From: Ophelia neglecta
Lineage: Eukaryota
Length of the DNA: 64,000 nucleotides
Assembly (NCBI GenBank): GCA_965285935.1
Contig: OZ260665.1
Coordinates: 40,114,001 to 40,178,000, forward strand
Direction: 5' to 3'
This document shows positions 42,992 through 64,000 of this stretch, piece after piece. A program made the translations under genes and the position numbers. Position 1 is the first letter of the stretch, and every line of letters begins with the position of its first letter. The notes under the pieces were generated by a model, which was given only the letters and a program-made list of their open reading frames with translations, was not told the DNA's origin and did no database searches.

Positions 42992-43055
42992 ATGGCTTTC
43001 GTGATACGCAGACAAAGTGGACAGGTCATCTTATGTTTGATTTCTCTTCTCTTAG

Positions 43056-43201
43056 AAACATGTGGCAATCCAGACGCCAAGAGGCTGTATGAAAATTTAT
43101 TAAAGAAGAATGGCTACAACAAGCTGATCAGACCCGTGGGAAACAATACGGACCAACTGACGGTTAAGCTCGGTCTCAGACTATCTCAGCTCATTGATGT
43201 G
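43056..43201 (+). CDS. nAChR alpha gene B, coding exon 2 (mature N-terminus); possible 5' extension to ATG 42992
   Basis: Acceptor tttctcttctcttAG| (43054-43055), phase 1. Reads (E)[48 protein letters not shown], then donor |GTGAGT, phase 0. NPDAKRLY is typical of invertebrate alpha1-4/alpha8-group subunits. Confidence 0.95.
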
Positions 43202-51495: not shown

Positions 51496-51540
51496 GACGA
51501 GAAGAATCAGATTATGACTACTAACGTTTGGCTCACTCAG
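51496..51540 (+). CDS. nAChR alpha gene B, coding exon 3 (45 nt, loop D)
   Basis: ttcattttcttgcAG|DEKNQIMTTNVWLTQ|GTAAGT, phase 0-0. This is the canonical 45-nt nAChR exon. Confidence 0.96.
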
Positions 51541-53002: not shown

Positions 53003-56000
53003 AAAAGTATTTCAAATGTAGAAAAAGAAGCAGTCATCGGAGTAAGCACTGTGAACAGAATATTTCAATAGCAAATTGGTCAATATTTGTAATGTGCACA
53101 ATTCTGACAAGAGAAAAACCTCCTTTTGTCATAAAAAGGCAAAACATAATGTTATTTGCACTTTTAATTTGGCAAAAAACATTAAGAATTCAGGTTAAAT
53201 GTTTGACTTGATTATCCTGAAACAAGAAAGATGCATGCCATGTAATTCCTTAGGAACGACGCGCCAAAACCTATTAGTGAGTTTTAATATTTGGCATGCT
53301 TTTTCTTCAATTGGAAAGATTCAGCTGTTGTTGACGAGCTGATGTGGCGAGTATCAGTCTCTGCTCACCTATGTCTCCTAGTAAATGGCAGAAAAAACTG
53401 CTTAGTGACAAGGAACTGAATTGCGGCGTTTGCCTGAAATGGAGCCAGTAATGATATATTTACTATTAACATTTCTGCTATCAATATGAGGAGAAAGAAT
53501 TACAATTTTCTTCTACAGTCGGTTCAACGACACATTGTATGCCTTTAGGCTAAAGTTGATGTAAACTTATAATATCACCGTGTAAACACATTTGAGTCTG
53601 AATTTGTGTAGGTTGACTATATAATAACCTTGTTATTGGGATTATTTTTCTTCGTTGTAAAGGCTTATATTTCGGCTTATATCTAGATACAATAACTGGC
53701 AGAAATACAATTTGACCTGGCCCATTTTGCGAAAGTTTTGAACAAGACTAGATTCTCGAACAAATGTTGTTCTTCTGGTTTCTAGAGTAATTATTATAGA
53801 GGAGAGAGGGGGAATAACAAATATCTGGGCATCAGGCAGTAAACCCGTCCATCTGTTTATCCATATGGACCTATGAATTATCTGTAACTATCTCAATTCC
53901 TCTCATGGATATCTCCTGGCACGGCAGTGAAAAAGCCAGAGCTCTCACAATGAGACGGAACAAAATGTACTTATTGGCAGAAAGCTAAATCTTACAATGT
54001 CTTTTGCACGTACATGCAGAACGTATGTCTCATGATACTCATAGAGTAGGAAATCAGATGTTAATATGGTCAACTGGATGGCAACCAAAATTGGAACAAT
54101 TGCTTTTAATAGCTGTCCTGGGTTATGTTTAGTATTATCATAAAATCCAAGAAGTATGTACAAGTCCGCTTGAATATTGGACATTGCAGAATACCCTGTT
54201 ATGCTTGCCTGCTGCATTGGCCGTGATTGAGCCGCCATTTAAGCCCGTTATTAATCACTAAGCTTGATTAATATTCCTACGAAGGATTCTATATGCAGCT
54301 GGTAAGAACGAAAAAGGCCCAGTATTAAATACGTTCTGTAAGGTATAGTAGACTTGCCTTTCTAGACATGTTGTTTTCTACTCTACCATATAATGAAGCA
54401 CACTCGACATTGCCTGTGCGTCGGTATTTGTTGTAATTAATAATCAAAAAAAGAACATTATAATTATGAGAATTGATGCTTATTAAAATGCATTATACTT
54501 TGAACTTGAATTCATAGTTTGGCCTGCTGATTGACTTACAATGCTCATATAAGTCTCTTCTTTGGTCCTACCTTAATTATATAATCTGTAAACATCGGCT
54601 TTGTACGCTGAAAGACCAAGCTATTGGTCACGAGACGACCATTCGCAGGGCGGCTGAGTAGTTGGTAATTTCGGGGCCTTCCTTTTCAAACAGACGTTTC
54701 TGGCCCTTTGTCTGACAGATTAGGGTCCCCTGGGATCATCTTGTATGACCGGAGATAATGTAATTTCATTCCGAGCAACAAAGAGCAGACCCCGCAGAGA
54801 AATCCCACGGTGAGGCGATGTGAAGACGCTGACAACAGAGGTTTACGCCCGGCTCATCGGGCTTTATCGCGTGACTTTTTCCTGGTCCCTCATTCACACT
54901 ACTTTCCTTTGTTGACAGAAGACGAGTTCATGAAAAAAGAGTAAATTGGACAATTCGCTAAAGGCCGGTCGTAGCCAGTATAGTCCAGCTATGCAACCTA
55001 TACTCGCCTAGACACCTTATATCAACCAGCTCTTATCCAGATTACATGTCAACTATCACAGGCTGCGTTCGAACAGAAATACTGTAGTTAGTGATAGACC
55101 TAGATTTTTTATAGCCTAGGTCTAGATACAAAAATTGGTATATCACTGTCGTTTGGTAAAAATAACTTATGCATAAGGCCTCACGCGAAAACCTCCCATC
55201 CTTATTCCAATGAGACACTTGATCTTAAATTTGAGTGATATGCAATATTGGTGTTGAGCATGAAAATACCCTCTGCCTAACCAAGTATTCGGTTTTTCTA
55301 AGTCCCGAACTTGATCCTTCCTCAAAGATCGAGTCAGTCGCTCGACGGTAAGTAGCTGAGCTATTGATCTCAGCATTCCCTCCTCCGGGACTCACATATG
55401 GAAGAGGAATTTGTTCCGGAAATGGAAGAGAGGGCCGCAATTTCCCGGCATTCCCTTCCCTTTCCGCTCGGTACAGACGCACATTTATGATAAAGTATTT
55501 CGATTAACATGTTTTTAAATATCTGGCTGGCAACCTTTACCACAAGCTATCCTGCAAATCTGCAGCTGGGTGTTCACTTTGAACAGTACTTCAAATAACC
55601 ATACTGGCGTAATGGATTTTGAAACTTTTGCAATCCCAAGGTTAAAGTCACGTCCTTGGGAGACCAACAGATGCCTCGTGTCTTCACGAACCTTTCTATT
55701 GAATACCTTGTCCAAAACACCTTTTATTGACATTCGTACTTGGCTCGTTTCTTGCTGGATTGATAATTTAAACAAATTTATGCTGCCACGGACATATCTG
55801 TGTATTAAATGATTATTGTCATATAGATTTTTTTTGTTGAGTTTGCTTGTTTCTATAACGCGCATGCTCATTTGAAGAAACACATGTTCCGGTTGATCAA
55901 TGCGATTTAACTCGTGTCCATTGACAATCGCTTTTAGCCGAAGCTAAATGAATTAAGTGCAACAATGATTGCTGAAACTTAAATCGACTGATTTCGATAT

Positions 56001-56418: not shown

Positions 56419-56645
56419 NNNNNNNNNNNNNNNNNNNNNNNNNNNNNNNNNNNNNNNNNNNNNNNNNNNNNNNNNNNNNNNNNNNNNNNNNNNNNNNNNN
56501 NNNNNNNNNNNNNNNNNNNNNNNNNNNNNNNNNNNNNNNNNNNNNNNNNNNNNNNNNNNNNNNNNNNNNNNNNNNNNNNNNNNNNNNNNNNNNNNNNNNN
56601 NNNNNNNNNNNNNNNNNNNNNNNNNNNNNNNNNNNNNNNNNNNNN
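56419..56645. other. Assembly gap (227 N)
   Basis: Run of N. The ORFs spanning it are artefacts. Confidence 0.99.
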
Positions 56646-57397
56646 TTATTTGGCTCGAGATCAGACAACGCTCATTCGTCAAGCAGTACTCTACTTTTTT
56701 TTTGTGACACTGTGGCTTGTCGGAAAGTCAATTTACAGCACACCTTGTGATACTTAACACATTGGTACTGCGTGGTAACGATCTCCATAAACAAAGGCAA
56801 TGACCGGTCCAGACAAAACGAAATGTATTGGGGTCTTGCAGGGCCTGTAGCTTTGTCAGATATTTACTGGATCTGGAAAATTACAGGCTGAAATAGCGTC
56901 AATAACCACTGGATCGACATTCATGTCATCCGGCGTCTGCCAAGGCATTCATCAGTTGTCACTCTCAAAGGCAGTCATTTCGAGAGGTGGGACAACAGTT
57001 TGTTGTCCGTGAGGAGTAGTCAGTCGGAGCAAGCCAATCAGCTAGCTTGTCACATTACGTCAGCTCCCAGCGAATTGCACGATTTACGACTCTGTAAATA
57101 AGACAAGGAAATCACCGGGAATCTGTAAGCTCAACAGATAGCTTTGGTTTAGTAAAGCGCACACCCAGCCGATTTCTGAGTTTAATGAAATCCAATGTAA
57201 ATCACACCAAGCTGTTTGAAACTTTATTCCCTATTCTTATTATGTACATGAACATTGTTTCCGCCAATCTTTTTAAATGGAGCATTTAGTTAATATCACA
57301 TAATGTTTGTATAAATATCTGTCTCAATTGGCGACTTTCCTCTGTACTATTAAGTTAAAGTAACTTGGACTTTTTGTGCTCGTCCTGCCACTAATAG

Positions 57398-57507
57398 GAG
57401 TGGGATGACTATAAGTTGGAGTGGCTACCTGAAGAGTACGGTGGCGTTGATCGTCTGTACGTACCCTCCGAGGAGATATGGCTGCCTGACATTGTACTCT
57501 ATAATAA
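57398..57507 (+). CDS. nAChR alpha gene B, coding exon 4a (110 nt, loop A), mutually exclusive copy
   Basis: ctaatAG|[38 protein letters not shown]|GTAAGT, phase 0-2. Joins exon 5 to give YNNADG. Confidence 0.95.
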
Positions 57508-58273
57508 GTAAGTCCTAATTCAGCAGAATTTCTCTGCCAGTGGAAATTCCCTACACGGTTTGTATTCCCTGTTAGATGTTTATATGTTGTGCGTGATGCA
57601 TTAGAATTGTGCCTGTAGACCATAGCGCTCGCCAGACACACGCGTTAGTTATTGTGGTTTTTTCCAATCAACTCGTTAACGTGCATGAACTTAATGCCAT
57701 TTTGTGATTGATGCGAAATGGTTGTTTTTATAATGTCATGTCCTGACGCAAAAAAATGGAAATGAACATTGCTCATACGCAGTGTTATTTTTGTGATTAC
57801 ATATTATTGTACATATTCTTGAAGTTTTGCATACTTCTTTCTTCTGTTAGGCCCATGTCTATGTAGGCCTAAAGGCCCTTGGACCTTATATGTTTGTTTT
57901 TAGCATTATTAGGTACTTGTAAACCCCTGTAGTCCCAGGTATAAAGTTGAAAATCTTGCGTTTATTGAAAAATAAATGTGGATTATTGGATTAGAGTATC
58001 GAATTGTTGATACTTGTTTGCGAATAGACTAGTCGCAATACCGTTAACGGACTTGAAACCATTCCAGTAGTGAATAATTTTTTTTTTAATTAACATTGTT
58101 TGAGCACACAATGGCCTTCAGAATGCTTGTTTCAATTTCTTTTCTTTTGAACAATTAAATTGACAGGGTAAAATTCAGCGAATTGCACTCAACAGAAATA
58201 TATTAATGTAGTTTTTGGATTGATGCAACATTTGCAAATTTTTTTGCAACTTTATAGCTAAGGGTTTAAAGGT

Positions 58274-58309
58274 ACGATAGCCTTTTTGTTCCTTTAAAAA
58301 GGCTATCGT
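58274..58309 (+). other. Perfect 14-bp hairpin between exons 4a and 4b
   Basis: ACGATAGCCTTTTT, 8-nt loop, AAAAAGGCTATCGT. Confidence 0.8.
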
Positions 58310-58485
58310 TATTGCATGGACGTGTCACTGCAAAAGTCAGCAACCGGTGTTATACCTCAGTGAACGTGAAAATGAATGTACATCTATGATTATAATTGTC
58401 ACTGCATGAGTATTGCTGTTTTTTAGTAAAGAAGTTTAAACTGCATGATGTGATTAGTTAAGTATTGTTCATGTCTTGTGAAAAG

Positions 58486-58595
58486 GTTTGGCACGACACT
58501 GGGCTAGCATGGATCCCGGAGGAGTATGGGGGTATAGAGGCGCTGACTGTACCTGCCTGGGACATCTGGCTCCCCGACATTGTCCTATACAACAA
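58486..58595 (+). CDS. nAChR alpha gene B, coding exon 4b (110 nt, loop A), mutually exclusive copy
   Basis: gaaaAG|[38 protein letters not shown]|GTATGT. Same length and phases as 4a, open frame, 23/36 residues identical. Confidence 0.88.
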
Positions 58596-61500
58596 GTATG
58601 TGGTCATAGGAAACCACTAAAACACTAACCAATTACTAGATATAAACAAACTTGTATAGGCAGACAACTGGTGAGATACTTCTAATACTCAAGGAGCCCA
58701 TTAATCATCCCGAGTGGAACAACTTCACAATATGCTTTTGTGAAGAATTGATTTGTAAAAGGCATTTCAACATTAAGTTTATTAATCAAGTAGAAATCTT
58801 ACCATTACTAGATTAGACTATACTTGTAGTTTAACATCCTTACTGTACATTGCGTCTTTTTATTACACGTGTGCTTGATGTATAAGTTGCACAATATAAT
58901 CATAAATTCTATTTTCAGCCATTTTGTCATAGCAATGTGTATTTCTGACCAAATCTGATTAATCGCATTCAGTGAGCATTTTTAATCATCTAAATATTTA
59001 TTGTTTATGCATTTGCTAAATATACATCAAGACACATTTATCATAAAGCACTTGCACCATCAAAAGAATATGCTTCTCTGCACAAGCGTTGCTTACATAA
59101 AGAAAATGAAAACAAACTTAAACATTTGAGATTAACCCAGTTGCACTGAATATTTCACAAGTACTTCTGATCATGTTTAAGTAAATGTTCTTATATTTCA
59201 GCCCAGTCTTTGAATTCAGCCCCGTGGCTTGGTTTAAACGATTTTGCTTCGCTATTTAGAAATTTTTAATCTGAAATAATCATAGGAAATGTGTCTCATG
59301 CATCAGTTCTGCCTTTCACCTAATCATTATCACGCGCATTAGCCAGGTAAATGCCAGACGACACTTCCAATGCCTGGGGCTCCTTCCGGTTACCACGCTG
59401 AAGAGAAACCATCGTGATTAATGCAATCCTTTGAAAAAATTCGTCTGACTCGCCAGATTAAGACATAATAAGCACTAATGTCTGTACCACGAGCCCCGGA
59501 GCCCTTGACTGAGGTAAACGACTGTCCTTGTAACGGGTAGCACAGGCGACTCCGGGGGGGGGGGGGGGGGGCTGGAGGGATAAGGGGTGGGATTCGACAT
59601 TTGTTCGACCAGTAGTAGTCTTTCAGGTGTAAGGAATGAAAGCCTCAATATCCCCTTCCAAGAAGAGGCAAAATGCGTAGAGCCCCACCCTTTTGAGAGG
59701 ATGCCTCGGTACCCATCCCAGCCCTCACCTTGATGGGACCCCCACTCTCCTCTGCCGAAAATGCTCCCTCCGCCAGCGGATAGACTGTATAGAATACTGA
59801 AGCTCGCCTGGCAGATTGGATTCCCTGGGTAGCATCACAAGTCAGAACCGGCCGACGATTAGCCATTCTTCGTATCATACGTCTCTCCTGCAGCTTTTTG
59901 CCTTCCAATTTCACAAACCTTCTCAGAAATCACATGCTAAAGCATTTTTATGTCATTCGCGAATCAAGATACACGCTTATTACCATCAGTAAATGCATTC
60001 TATTGTCTGCCCCCGCAACGTCCTCATTGGTAAATGGTACACTGATATTTCTCATCGGCAGTGAAGCAACTATAAAAACCCAAATTAGACATTTCAGCAT
60101 GCCTCTCGGTCTCGCCCCTGACACGACTCTCCATTCATCATTATATAATGAAATGTACTTTAGGAATAGTTTCATTGGCCTAGGGTTGACTAAGATTTAT
60201 AGAAAATCCAATGGAATTTGAAAGATTTTACAATGCAGAAAATAGTTTAGGTAATATTGAGCTAGTTAATATTCAACAATTGATCTGATCATTCATGCCC
60301 ATGTGACAACCCAGAGAGAGGCACGGTGATGTTTCCAAATGGGTGCGTCCAATCTCAGATTAATGTCGTAGGATGCTAGTGCCGGTACGAGAGACAGACT
60401 CGGGCCTTTCTCCTGCCCAGCAAACTGCTGACGATGAGAAACCATGTCATGCTTTAGTCACCCATCTGAGAGGACTCCCTTACAAAAGCGTCGATAAGCA
60501 GCCAAAAGTAACCTACAGACTCATAGGCCTAGTTCTTAGGGAGAAAAAATCGAAACGGGATATTATACTTCCGCGATCGGATTTCAGGTCTATGCTAAAT
60601 TCCTCCCGCGTGCGATGAAAATCCATTTATTGATTGTTTCATTTCTTGACAAACAACATTTTATAAACGTGTCATACTAATTATTGTTTTTGTCTCTTCC
60701 TAGGAGCGCCGGCGGAATACTTCAAAGATGTTTTCTTTTTTCAGCCATCGATTGATATTGTTTCAGTCGTCTGAGCTTGAGCATGCGCTGAAGCAAAAAG
60801 CAGAATGGAGTTATACAAAGTTGTCACTTGCCACTGTCACACCGGATGCACTTTAAGCTCTCAGAATCCCATTGGCTTCCTCGCCAGTCTTTTCATGTTA
60901 TTCCAATAAACTCTTGATAAAGTGGTATGTCTCTTACAGGTCATCCTATCCTAGCATGCTTGGACGTGTTTATTCTTTGTGACTGATCCATATTCCTGCA
61001 ACCTAGCTGTACAAAACAGCAATCTTTATTTTATATGTATGCATTTATATTCCTATACAAGTATTATTTATCCTCTTCCTATTTGAAATTGATTTCGTGT
61101 ATGCCTCTTTCCATATGTTGTATGACTTTAATAATTCAATGTTTTACTGTTCTTCCTTCTGCCTCGAGCTCTGATACATTTACCTAAATCAGTTTTACTT
61201 TTTTATTCCATGCATACCTTTGTCTCGTATCCTGTTTCTACTAATTGCCTGTCAACTCGCTAAGGTTTCCTTCCATTCCAGGTGTTTTATTGCATGTGAA
61301 TCGTGTCTAATGGTTTTTCATGTCACATTTTCTTCTATCTACCTATCGTATATTTAATTTCCAATAACTATAAGTCTTGGTATGACTCTTACTTAAGTAT
61401 TTGATTTTTACTACCGCATCTTCTATCTATAATTTGAATGTAGCCTTTGCTATGGGCTGGTTTTTAGAAAAATGGCTGGATGTCTCTGCGTCTTAAAAAA

Positions 61501-62002
61501 TTGAAACCTCGTGTATTTATTAAACTCTAAAGAGCTAGTATAATTAATGTGTAAACAATTATATCAAGAAGAGACATGCCCTGAAGCTCATGTCTCTCAT
61601 TTATTGCCAATCCAATCACTGTAACCTATCCAAAATATGATGATTTTTTTTCGGAGTGATCTTGTAATGTATTGAAAATATGATCGGAAACAACCAAGCG
61701 GCGTAATATTTGCCTATACCTCGGGCTAAGTTCAGAGAAAAAAAACGAGCATCCATACATGTTTATCTCAAGTTTGAGAACTTGATATTAAACTGAGAAT
61801 TGCCTCTGTTCTATAGAGCCACCCCATCCGACGTTTGTCATCCCTCCCCTTCAATGAGTTTGATGTCTTGTAAGACTTATCACCATTTTGTTATCCTGCC
61901 AGTTTTTGTTTTGATGTATTAAACTATCTATCTATCGGACGTGCCATAGCCCTGGAGAGATGTAAGCTTTACCTGGAGTTTACACGTCATTGCATTTTGC
62001 AG

Positions 62003-63002
62003 CGCTGACGGTAACTACGAGGTAACTCTGATGACAAAAGCCACAATATTCCCAACAGGCAAGGTTCACTGGGAACCCCCGGCAATATACAAGTCATCAT
62101 GTCACATCAATGTCGAGTTTTTCCCATTTGATGAGCAACTGTGCACCCTCAAATTTGGCAGCTGGACCTACGATGGCTTTCAAGTGGACTTGAAGCATAT
62201 TGGACAAATTGGGGAGAATGATGGTGATGTAATCCAGACGGGTATAGATATAAAAGATTTCTACCGCTCAGCCGAATGGGATTTGTTGAGCTGTCCAGCT
62301 AAAAAGAATCAGAAATATTACACCTGCTGCGAGGAGCCCTACCCTGATATCACATTTAATATAACCATGAGAAGGAAGACCCTGTTCCACACAGTTAACC
62401 TGATTATCCCCTGCGTAGCCATCAGCTTCCTTACTGTACTCGTCTTTTACTTGCCCTCCGACAGCGGGGAGAAGATTACCTTGTGTATCTCCATTCTGCT
62501 TTCTCTCACCGTGTTCTTCCTGCTCCTGGCTGAGATCATTCCGCCCACCTCGCTGGTGGTGCCCCTTATCGGAAAGTACCTCCTCTTTACTATGATACTG
62601 GTGACCCTGAGCATTATCGTCACTGTGATAGTCCTCAACGTACACTTCCGCGGCCCTACCACTCACACTATGTCGCCCTGGGTACGAAAGGTCTTCCTCA
62701 ACATTCTTCCACGCCTATTACTCATGCGCAGACCCAACGTGGACCGGGACAAGGCCCCCAAGGTGGTGGTGCGCACGTGCAATGGCGTAGAGATCCGGGA
62801 CAGCTATGGTGAGGGGAAGCGGCTGAGCCGGGATTTGACCTTTGACAACATGGGCGGCTTCACATCTGCGATTCTGCGAGAGGAGATTGACTTTGAAATC
62901 CCCCCAGCAGCCAGGGCGCAATACGCACCGGAAGTCATCAGAGCGATAGATGGCGCCAAATTCATTGCTGAACATCTTAAGTTGGAGGACGACGCCAGAA
63001 AT
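62003..63002 (+). CDS. nAChR alpha gene B, coding exon 5 (Cys loop, loops E/B/F/C, TM1-TM3, cytoplasmic loop); TM4 exon beyond window
   Basis: cattttgcAG|[15 protein letters not shown]..., Cys loop [15 protein letters not shown], loop B GSWTYDG, loop [10 protein letters not shown] (vicinal Cys = alpha subunit), SGEKITL (cation-selective), ...[14 protein letters not shown]|GTAAGT, phase 0. Confidence 0.98.
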
Positions 63003-64000
63003 GTAAGTTAGGCTTAGTGGAAAACAGGTAACAACAAAACAAGACGCATCAATTTCGTGTTGGCCATACTGTTGCTTTTTTTCAAAGTGAAAAAGAGAAA
63101 TTGCAAGCCAAAGACACATAAAAGAGCCTATCGGGGCTTGAGTTCATCTAAATGCTGAAGACGTATTCTGTTTCCTTTGTTCTGATTTCCCTCGTGTGTA
63201 ATGCGATTAGTATCGTTCATTCTCTACCATCCCTCGCCATTCGTCCCGACTCAACAGCCTCTTTTTGGATTTATTTAAGGCTTCTAATCTACATAATCGT
63301 TCATGGGCAGTGTTCATATATCTATTGATTTGTCTTATTAGTGTATAAATCCCAGAGACAGGTGATGAAAATTCGGATTATCCGAGCGTATTATAACAGG
63401 GAGAGTGACCACATGCCGAGCGATCGAATGCTACTTAGCCTCGTTATTGACCTGTCTTATTTTCCCCCCAATTCATCTACTTATACAAGTCCCAGATCCC
63501 TACACGATTAATTTATTCTGCTCCTGACGACCATTGGCGGGATTAGTAAAGCCTCATCAGACATGTTGTATTAATGTATTGGGAATTAGGATAATATAAT
63601 AATGAACCATGTCCTGCGCATGGGGACTCGGGTGATTAAGATAATTAATTAAGTATGAAACAATTATAAGTGATTAACTGTTTATGTGTTTATATATATA
63701 TTGCTTCCTGAAGTCATAACTAATCAGTAAAATTGTTTTATCTTTAATTCAAAAGAAGTTCAAACAAATCAGCGAAGATATTTGTTGGAAACTAAGTAAT
63801 ATTATAAAAGAAATAACCAGAACACTCAAGCCAACCGCTATACTTTAGGAGTTAACCGTTTTTATAAACAGCTGTGTAAACCATCCTAATAAAGAAAACA
63901 AGGACCGTTTAATTTGAATTTGAAAAATGGGAGGGGGGTAGAAAAAAGTAAACAAATGTCTTCAAAGCTTTAGCCAAAAGAAATTCTGACTATCTAAAGG

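What the first reader, a model, noticed from the sequence alone, without database searches (positions are those of the whole stretch)
57398..58595. Mutually exclusive duplicated loop-A exons (4a/4b) in an nAChR alpha gene
Seen: two 110-nt exons 978 nt apart with identical phases (0-2), canonical splice sites and open frames. The [10 protein letters not shown] motif is identical in protein while most of its third codon positions differ (CTG/CTC, CCT/CCC, GTA/GTC, CTC/CTA, TAT/TAC, AAT/AAC), which indicates an old duplication with both copies under selection. Including both or neither shifts the frame. The 13 substitutions fall at the end of loop D (E/V), the DYKL/DTGL segment, the LYVP/LTVP position that aligns with Aplysia AChBP Arg79, and SEE/AWD just before loop A. 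Known: insect alpha4 has alternative exons 4/4' in this region. Inference: two pharmacologically or assembly-distinct isoforms, either convergent with or ancestral to the insect case. The ORF track shows neither exon.
Basis: partly seen in the sequence, partly recalled or inferred. Interest (0 to 1): 0.85.

Follow-up and report, generated by a model that had tools for sequence, protein, structure and literature searches.

The report
Either-or exon pair in nicotinic receptor
A nicotinic acetylcholine receptor alpha-subunit gene of this invertebrate (probably an annelid) has two old, intact tandem copies of one 110-base ligand-binding-domain exon that are very likely used one at a time; molluscs and a ribbon worm have the same pair, and it is not the exon that insects alternate.

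Summary
Two 110-nt exons (57398-57507 and 58486-58595) lie 978 nt apart. They share phase, have AG/GT sites and open frames, and 23 of 36 residues are identical. Synonymous sites are saturated (pS 0.91) against pN 0.22. Including both exons or neither gives an immediate stop codon. DNA contigs from sequencing runs span both copies, so this is not an assembly artefact.

No RNA run exists for this organism, so splicing here is inferred. The comparative support is strong. RefSeq isoform pairs of equal length in oysters, scallops, abalones, a limpet, Biomphalaria, octopuses and the nemertean Lineus differ only in this 36-residue exon. Three fetched loci show the same order: conserved 'A' copy, then divergent 'B' copy, then exon 5. 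One of these is the nearest relative with DNA. Full-length B-type transcripts exist in mollusc RNA assemblies.

The B copy evolves about 4-5 times faster than A, and A and B differ at the same positions across taxa.

Insect alpha4 exon 4/4' encodes loop E to loop B, not this stretch from loop D to loop A.

A shared ancient origin is favoured by the tree but not proven (AU test p 0.38).

The scan has noted many other either-or exon pairs in this genome.

The parts
42992..43201 (+). First coding exon: signal peptide, N-terminal helix and beta1. It equals vertebrate exons 1+2 fused, is 70 codons long and ends in phase 0 with donor gtgagt.
   Evidence: ORF; sequence
51496..51540 (+). Constitutive 45-nt exon ('exon 3'), loop D (DEKNQIMTTNVWLTQ), single copy
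54941..54959 (+). Candidate docking sequence in intron 3. Nine bases (CAATTCGCT) are complementary to both copies of the 13-mer, and 16 of 19 bases are complementary to the first copy's surroundings. Weak, unproven.
   Evidence: (I9)
57068..57080 (+). 13-mer CAGCGAATTGCAC, 330 nt upstream of exon 4a (candidate selector)
   Evidence: 2 matches in the window, 0.04 expected
57398..57507 (+). Exon 4a, the conserved 'A-type' copy. It is 89-92% identical in protein to the A exons of relatives and carries the A signature K64, R77, Y79, S82 (muscle alpha1 numbering).
58176..58188 (+). Second copy of the 13-mer, 310 nt upstream of exon 4b (candidate selector)
58486..58595 (+). Exon 4b, the divergent 'B-type' copy. 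It has the same length and phase but a weaker acceptor (aaaag|G). It lacks the A signature (G64, A77, T79, A82) and keeps L87 and Y93.
62003..63002 (+). Exon 5 (1000 nt): loop E, Cys-loop, loop B, loop C with YTCC (alpha type), TM1-TM3 and the start of the cytoplasmic loop. Donor gtaagt at 63003. The TM4 exon lies beyond the window.

Best explanation
Exons 4a and 4b are a tandem-duplicated pair of mutually exclusive exons of one nicotinic receptor alpha-subunit gene. Each mRNA carries exon 3, then either 4a or 4b, then exon 5. This gives two subunits that differ at 13 residues between the end of loop D and loop A (muscle alpha1 positions 59-84). Exclusivity is enforced at least by the reading frame. 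Each exon is 110 nt, and transcripts with both or with neither meet a stop codon within a few codons, so they should be removed by nonsense-mediated decay. The 978-nt intron is too long for steric exclusion. 4a is the conserved default form. 4b is the fast-evolving variant: it replaces the A-type residues K64, R77, Y79 and S82 and the residue after loop D (E59V). The inferred effect is to change the complementary face of the agonist site and the apex loop, and so pharmacology and/or assembly. The pair most likely descends from a duplication that predates the split of annelids, molluscs and nemerteans. Shown: the anatomy, the selection, the frame logic, and the orthologous A/B isoforms elsewhere. 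Inferred: use of 4b in this species, the functional effect, and a single origin.
For: Anatomy and frame. Selection since duplication: pS 0.91 against pN 0.22, Fisher p 4e-10. DNA contigs of three runs span both exons, one of them the whole 57200-63000 stretch. Equal-length RefSeq isoform pairs differ only in these 36 residues in Ostrea, three Haliotis species, two Octopus species, Pecten, Mizuhopecten, Argopecten, Patella, Biomphalaria and Lineus. The genomic order exon 3, A, B, exon 5, with 110-nt exons and AG/GT sites, is seen in Lineus (L033), Tegillarca (L032) and the nearest relative with DNA (L034). Full-length B-type proteins come from Logan contigs of 1.8-3.4 kb, too short to be anything but spliced transcripts (P0034, P0041, P0096). 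A and B differ at the same positions in 11 taxa: positions 63 and 64 in 11 of 11, and positions 66, 77 and 79 in 10 of 11. All 13 differences in the window fall on positions that differ in at least 5 of the 11 taxa. The maximum-likelihood tree puts 4b inside a clade of 20 rows, most of them B exons of known A/B pairs, with 96/95 support.
Against: There is no RNA evidence for this organism. The run search found no RNA holder, and the one 'RNA?' run behaves like DNA of a relative. Two related loci, Paralvinella L031 and L035, have only the A exon, so B can be lost, or those loci are paralogues. 4b evolves fast: dN is 0.42 against 0.09 for 4a between the window and L034. No closer 4b-like sequence turned up in two protein searches. 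4b's acceptor is weak. The AU test does not reject 4a and 4b as sisters (p 0.38).
Confidence: 0.8

Rival explanations
1. 4b is an unused relic, or serves only as a 'poison' exon whose inclusion together with 4a triggers decay. In that case only the 4a protein is ever made.
For: No RNA data exist here. The acceptor is weak. B evolves 4-5 times faster than A. B is absent from two related loci.
Against: With synonymous sites saturated, a neutral copy would have lost its frame and similarity. Instead pN is 0.22-0.32 against pS 0.86-0.91, the length is exactly 110 nt, splice sites are intact, and it matches Pfam above the cut-off. B exons are coding in annotated isoforms and assembled transcripts of other phyla. 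A poison exon does not need a conserved protein frame.
Confidence: 0.1
2. The pair is functional but arose by a separate duplication in this animal's own lineage. On this reading its likeness to mollusc B exons is convergence or long-branch attraction. This is a rival on origin only.
For: The AU test does not reject 4a+4b as one clade (log-likelihood difference 3.3, p 0.38). 4b keeps L87 and Y93 like A exons, unlike most B exons. Lineus A and B are close to each other and group together in the tree. The alignment has only 36 columns.
Against: The maximum-likelihood tree places 4b with mollusc B exons and the L034 B exon (96/95). The A-then-B order is the same in four genomes. The same positions carry the A/B difference in 11 taxa. 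Synonymous sites between 4a and 4b are as saturated as between phyla.
Confidence: 0.35
3. The pair is the counterpart of the insect alpha4 exon 4/4' alternative exons.
For: Only the shared name 'exon 4' and membership in the same broad subunit group. The best arthropod matches of exon 5 are alpha1, alpha3 and beta2-like subunits.
Against: The insect alternative exon encodes loop E, the Cys-loop neighbourhood and loop B. Here that stretch lies in the single-copy exon 5, and the duplicated exon covers alpha1 residues 59-94.
Confidence: 0.03
4. The pair is an assembly artefact or a collapsed haplotype duplication.
For: An N run lies nearby in intron 3 (56419-56645).
Against: The copies differ at 40 of 108 coding bases and their introns do not align. 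Contigs of three runs cross both copies, though these runs come from one sample that may itself be the assembly's source. Other species have the same arrangement.
Confidence: 0.01

Closest known systems
Exon 4 A/B isoforms of lophotrochozoan 'acetylcholine receptor subunit alpha-like 1' genes. These are RefSeq isoforms X1/X2 of Ostrea edulis, Haliotis spp., Octopus spp., Pecten maximus, Patella vulgata, Biomphalaria glabrata and Lineus longissimus.
   Same: The same 36-residue exon is swapped and the same gene family is involved (exon 5 is 65-75% identical). The order A then B upstream of the large exon 5 is the same where DNA was read. The same positions carry the difference.
   Different: These isoforms exist only as database annotation. 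I found no paper that describes them. The window's 4b keeps L87 and the loop A tyrosine (Y93), which most B exons change to T/N and F. At position 79 it has T instead of the molluscan E.
Insect nAChR alpha4 exon 4/4' (Lansdell and Millar 2000, as cited in PMC2045683; also PMC12309072)
   Same: It is a two-way mutually exclusive exon pair in the ligand-binding domain of a related alpha subunit, and it is old and conserved. The 4' form assembles less efficiently.
   Different: It is a different exon: loop E to loop B, not loop D to loop A.
Insect nAChR alpha6 exons 3a/3b and 8a/b/c (PMC1919356, PMC5111602)
   Same: These are tandem-duplicated mutually exclusive exons in a nicotinic subunit. Exon 3a/3b is the 45-nt exon just upstream of the one duplicated here.
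   Different: The 45-nt exon is single copy here, and alpha6 belongs to a different subunit group.
Docking-site/selector RNA pairing that controls mutually exclusive exons (Drosophila Dscam exon 6, 14-3-3 zeta; from my own knowledge)
   Same: An identical 13-mer lies 310-330 nt upstream of each alternative exon, and a complementary 9-mer lies in the upstream intron.
   Different: Pairing is strong only with the first copy. No common partner was found in three other species, and the statistics are near what a scan of 2000 windows gives by chance.

Membership tests
Tandem-duplicated mutually exclusive exon pair | Adjacent homologous exons of equal length and phase with usable splice sites | tested here: met
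   Both exons are 110 nt, start in phase 0 and have AG/GT sites. They share 64% protein identity.
Tandem-duplicated mutually exclusive exon pair | Including both or neither destroys the reading frame | tested here: met
   A stop appears after 6 codons with both exons and at codon 2 of exon 5 with neither.
Tandem-duplicated mutually exclusive exon pair | Both copies kept by purifying selection | tested here: met
   pS is 0.91 against pN 0.22 between the copies. The B exon in L034 is open with intact splice sites.
Tandem-duplicated mutually exclusive exon pair | Mature transcripts carry exactly one of the two | not testable with these tools
   No RNA run holds this gene. In orthologues the annotated isoforms carry one or the other.
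Lophotrochozoan alpha-like 1 exon 4 A/B pair | Order: 45-nt exon, A-type exon, B-type exon, large exon 5 | tested here: met
   The window, L033 and L032 and L034 show this order, although exon 3 was not found in L034 and exon 5 was not found in L032.
Lophotrochozoan alpha-like 1 exon 4 A/B pair | The A copy carries K64, R77, Y79, S82, L87 and Y93. The B copy replaces most of them. | tested here: inconclusive
   4a has all six. 4b replaces four (G, A, T, A) but keeps L87 and Y93, which 8 of 11 B exons change.
Lophotrochozoan alpha-like 1 exon 4 A/B pair | The B copy groups with other B copies in a tree | tested here: inconclusive
   The maximum-likelihood tree puts 4b in the B clade (96/95). 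The AU test does not reject 4a+4b as sisters (p 0.38).
Insect alpha4 exon 4/4' pair | The alternative exon encodes loop E, the Cys-loop neighbourhood and loop B | tested here: not met
   The duplicated exon aligns to alpha1 residues 59-94. Loop E to loop B lies in the single-copy exon 5.
nAChR alpha-type subunit | Cys-loop (two cysteines 13 residues apart), vicinal cysteines in loop C, Neur_chan_LBD plus Neur_chan_memb domains | tested here: met
   Exon 5 contains C-x13-C and YTCC. Pfam scores are 125.6 and 203.6 bits.
Docking-site/selector control of exon choice | One docking site complementary to a selector upstream of each variant, conserved among relatives | tested here: inconclusive
   The 13-mer is present twice. 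A 9-nt complement lies at 54951-54959. No common partner was found in L033 or L034.

The most novel reading that the evidence does not exclude
The A/B exon pair arose once, before annelids, molluscs and nemerteans diverged (over 500 million years ago). It has since served as a conserved splice switch in the main 'alpha-like 1' nicotinic subunit of lophotrochozoans. The frozen A module is paired with a fast-evolving B module that rewrites residues on the complementary face and, in most lineages, the loop A tyrosine. This would give each lineage a second, pharmacologically distinct receptor from one gene. No paper in the searched library describes it.
Probability: 0.5. Interest if true: 0.55.

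Novelty: new member of a known kind. Interest (0 to 1): 0.45.

Why it matters
Nicotinic receptors of molluscs and annelids are studied as models of synaptic function and as off-target sites of neonicotinoids. Published surveys count genes, not isoforms. [quoted passage not shown] These versions differ at positions next to loop D and loop A and around the apex loop, which in muscle receptors affects assembly. This would bear on expression studies, toxicology and gene-family counts. It would also give a clean natural experiment: one constant module and one fast-evolving module at the same site. The pair is already implicit in RefSeq isoforms of other species, and either-or exons are common in Cys-loop receptors, so a specialist would find it useful rather than astonishing.

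Tried and rejected
1. RNA evidence. The run search with exon 5 found no RNA holder. I laid four runs on 57200-63000. Three are DNA of one sample and confirm the tandem layout. The fourth, guessed to be RNA, is a relative at 85-91% likeness whose contigs run from 4a into intron-like letters, so it behaves as DNA and shows no junction.

2. Closer relatives. The contigs of P0002 and P0013 could not be fetched because the files are too large. P0005 and P0031 are not on record.

3. phmmer with 4b against 1.8 billion representatives. The best identity to 4b was 26 of 36, and that hit was an A-type exon. No close 4b orthologue appeared.

4. Word-index search with the 51-residue ORF around 4b. It returned no candidate. 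This blank says little.

5. Other tandem exon 4 pairs in this genome. Close pairs on C12, C8 and C2 proved to be separate neighbouring genes, each with its own exon 5.

6. Docking/selector pairing. It is not supported across species.

7. Extended similarity of the introns around 4a and 4b. There is none beyond the 13-mer.

8. Joined model. All searches were exon by exon by reference, and frame consequences were read from single exons. The N run at 56419-56645 was left as it is.

Full report
**What is in the sequence**

The plus strand of the window carries a nicotinic acetylcholine receptor gene. I read the following exons:
- a first coding exon at 42992-43201 (signal peptide to beta1);
- the family's typical 45-nt exon at 51496-51540;
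- two 110-nt exons at 57398-57507 (4a) and 58486-58595 (4b);
- a 1000-nt exon 5 at 62003-63002, which encodes loop E, the Cys-loop, loop B, loop C with the alpha-type YTCC, and TM1-TM3.

Pfam finds Neur_chan_LBD and Neur_chan_memb in exon 5. Each exon 4 copy matches LBD profile positions 56-91 above the curated cut-off. A tblastn scan of the whole window finds one copy of exon 3, one of exon 5 and two of exon 4, so the duplication is confined to this one exon. The TM4 exon lies beyond the window. An N run (56419-56645) sits in intron 3 and was left alone.

**Check of the observation**

- Both exons are 110 nt, start in phase 0 and end after the second base of a codon.
- Acceptors and donors are AG and GT (gtaagt and gtatgt), and the intron between them is 978 nt.
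- The peptides share 23 of 36 residues.
- Differences by codon position are 10, 7 and 23, and 14 of the 23 conserved residues are spelled with different codons.
- Nei-Gojobori counting gives pS 0.91, which is saturated, against pN 0.22. The contrast is significant (Fisher p 4e-10).
- Reading 4b in the frame left by 4a meets a stop after six codons. Reading exon 5 in the frame left by exon 3 meets a stop at its second codon.

This is not an assembly artefact. Contigs built from three sequencing runs of one sample cross both copies, and one contig covers all of 57200-63000. That sample may itself be the assembly's source.

**Which animal and which gene**

Exon 5 is 82-83% identical to unnamed proteins from public assemblies. 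It is about 75% identical to proteins of the annelids Owenia and Paralvinella and the nemertean Lineus. It is 65-69% identical to mollusc 'acetylcholine receptor subunit alpha-like 1' proteins. The genome is 762 Mb and holds at least 150 exon-4-like sequences. This fits the nAChR expansion reported for lophotrochozoans (PMC6896357). Other close pairs of exon-4-like hits that I examined in this genome are neighbouring genes, each with its own exon 5.

**RNA evidence**

None could be obtained. The run search found no RNA holder. The one run guessed to be RNA is a relative's DNA-like material: its contigs continue past the 4a donor into intron-like letters. Use of 4b in this species is therefore inferred, not shown.

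**Comparative evidence**

This is the main result.
- Clusters of the best named hits contain pairs of RefSeq isoforms of equal length.
- Aligning the pairs shows that they differ only in the 36 residues of this exon. This holds in Ostrea edulis, three Haliotis species, Octopus vulgaris and O. bimaculoides, Pecten, Mizuhopecten, Argopecten, Patella vulgata, Biomphalaria glabrata and Lineus longissimus.
- One version (A) is close to 4a everywhere. The other (B) is divergent.
- Three fetched loci carry the A exon followed by the B exon upstream of exon 5, each 110 nt with AG/GT sites. These are Lineus (L033), the clam Tegillarca (L032) and L034, the nearest relative whose DNA could be fetched (exon 5 is 80% identical). 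Exon 3 was found upstream only in L033 and L032, and exon 5 was not found within L032.
- Full-length B-type proteins also come from Logan contigs of 1.8-3.4 kb. These are too short to be anything but spliced transcripts (P0034, P0041, P0096).
- Two other related loci, Paralvinella L031 and L035, have only the A exon. Either B was lost there or these loci are paralogues.

**How the two copies evolve**

Between the window and L034 the A exon has dN 0.09 and the B exon dN 0.42, while synonymous sites are saturated in both. B is therefore constrained but evolves four to five times faster than A.

Across 11 taxa with both copies, mean pairwise identity is 0.76 for A and 0.55 for B, and the A/B difference falls on the same positions. 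In muscle alpha1 numbering:
- positions 63 and 64 differ in 11 of 11 taxa;
- positions 66, 77 and 79 differ in 10 of 11;
- positions 61, 83 and 84 differ in 9 of 11;
- positions 82, 87 and 93 differ in 8 of 11.

All 13 differences in the window lie on positions that differ in at least 5 of the 11 taxa. A exons carry K64, R77, Y79, S82, L87 and Y93 in nearly every taxon. The window's 4b replaces the first four but keeps L87 and Y93. Most B exons change those two to T/N and to F.

**Where the exon sits in the protein**

The exon aligns to residues 59-94 of solved muscle alpha1 subunits. From my own knowledge of these structures, that stretch comprises:
- the end of strand beta2 after loop D;
- the beta2-beta3 apex loop, which is the main immunogenic region of muscle alpha1;
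- strand beta3;
- loop A, with its tyrosine at position 93.

The likely effects follow from that layout. They are a changed complementary face of the agonist site (positions 59 and 79) and changed surroundings of the apex loop (positions 61-66 and 75-77), which in muscle receptors bears on folding and assembly. This is inference, and no functional test was possible.

**Origin**

A maximum-likelihood tree of 58 exon peptides puts 4b in a clade of 20 rows with 96/95 support. Most of that clade are mollusc B exons of known A/B pairs, and it also holds the L034 B exon. 4a sits among annelid A exons. The alignment has only 36 columns and 4b is a long branch. The AU test does not reject 4a and 4b as sisters (p 0.38). 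The Lineus pair also groups together. A single ancient duplication is favoured by three things: the tree, the shared A-then-B order, and the shared positions of difference. It is not proven.

**How exclusivity works**

- Frame plus nonsense-mediated decay is sufficient, and the frame part is shown by the sequence.
- Steric exclusion is unlikely with a 978-nt intron.
- Both donors look like ordinary U2-type sites.
- An identical 13-mer lies 330 and 310 nt upstream of the two exons (2 matches in the window, 0.04 expected).
- A site in intron 3 (54941-54959) is complementary to nine of its bases, and to 16 of 19 bases around the first copy.
- That site is the best duplex partner of the first copy in the whole 10-kb region (z -4.7) but not of the second. 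No common partner appears in Lineus or L034.

RNA pairing therefore remains a lead only.

**Comparison with what is known**

The alternative exon 4/4' of insect alpha4 changes residues near the Cys-loop, in loop E and loop B (PMC2045683; PMC12309072). Here that stretch lies in the single-copy exon 5. Insect alpha6 alternates the 45-nt exon 3 and the TM2 exon, which again are different exons.

The true counterpart is the A/B exon 4 of lophotrochozoan alpha-like 1 genes, which exists as RefSeq annotation. Four full-text searches and a reading of the lophotrochozoan nAChR survey (PMC6896357), which does not treat isoforms, found no description of it. Subscription journals are largely outside that library.

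**Verdict**

- The either-or reading is very probably right (0.8) on comparative grounds.
- The insect comparison is wrong.
- For this genome the pair is a new member of a kind already visible in databases for other phyla. As a conserved lophotrochozoan feature it seems undescribed.
- The scan has noted many other either-or exon pairs in this same genome, so the phenomenon is common here.
All searches were exon by exon by reference.

Noticed in passing
window 57068-57080, 58176-58188 and 54941-54959: An identical 13-mer lies upstream of each alternative exon. An intron 3 site is complementary to 9 of its bases, and to 16 of 19 bases around the first copy. It is the best duplex partner of the first copy in 10 kb (z -4.7) but not of the second. 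No equivalent was found in three other species.
   Followed up: partly
L034:7087-7196, L033:44373-44482, L032:9734-9843 and RefSeq isoforms: In 8 of 11 taxa the B exon changes the loop A tyrosine (alpha1 Y93) to phenylalanine and L87 to T, N, S or I. The window's 4b keeps both. B-exon acceptors are consistently weak (aag or cag after a poor pyrimidine tract).
   Followed up: partly
L031 (Paralvinella palmiformis) and L035 (unnamed ENA contig): These related genes have only the A-type exon 4, and no B-like sequence lies in the 2-kb intron before exon 5. Either B was lost or they are paralogues. L035 also carries a second nAChR gene about 7 kb downstream.
   Followed up: partly
G000 C7:103.5-104.9 Mb, C12:64.46-64.65 Mb, C2:27.08-27.16 Mb, C2:79.33-79.47 Mb: Dense tandem arrays of exon-4-like sequences suggest large local expansions of nicotinic-receptor genes. 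The whole genome has at least 150 hits.
   Followed up: no
window 56419-56645: An N run of 227 bases lies in intron 3 of the gene. It was left unfilled.
   Followed up: no
window 57434-57513 and 62105-63000 (run X1): A 2015 run of another organism holds contigs 85-91% like exon 4a and exon 5. The 4a pieces continue into intron-like letters, so the run looks like DNA of a relative. No 4b-like piece was laid, though at 85% likeness a fast-evolving B exon would not be.
   Followed up: no
My exon probes found no match there and I did not examine it.
   Followed up: no
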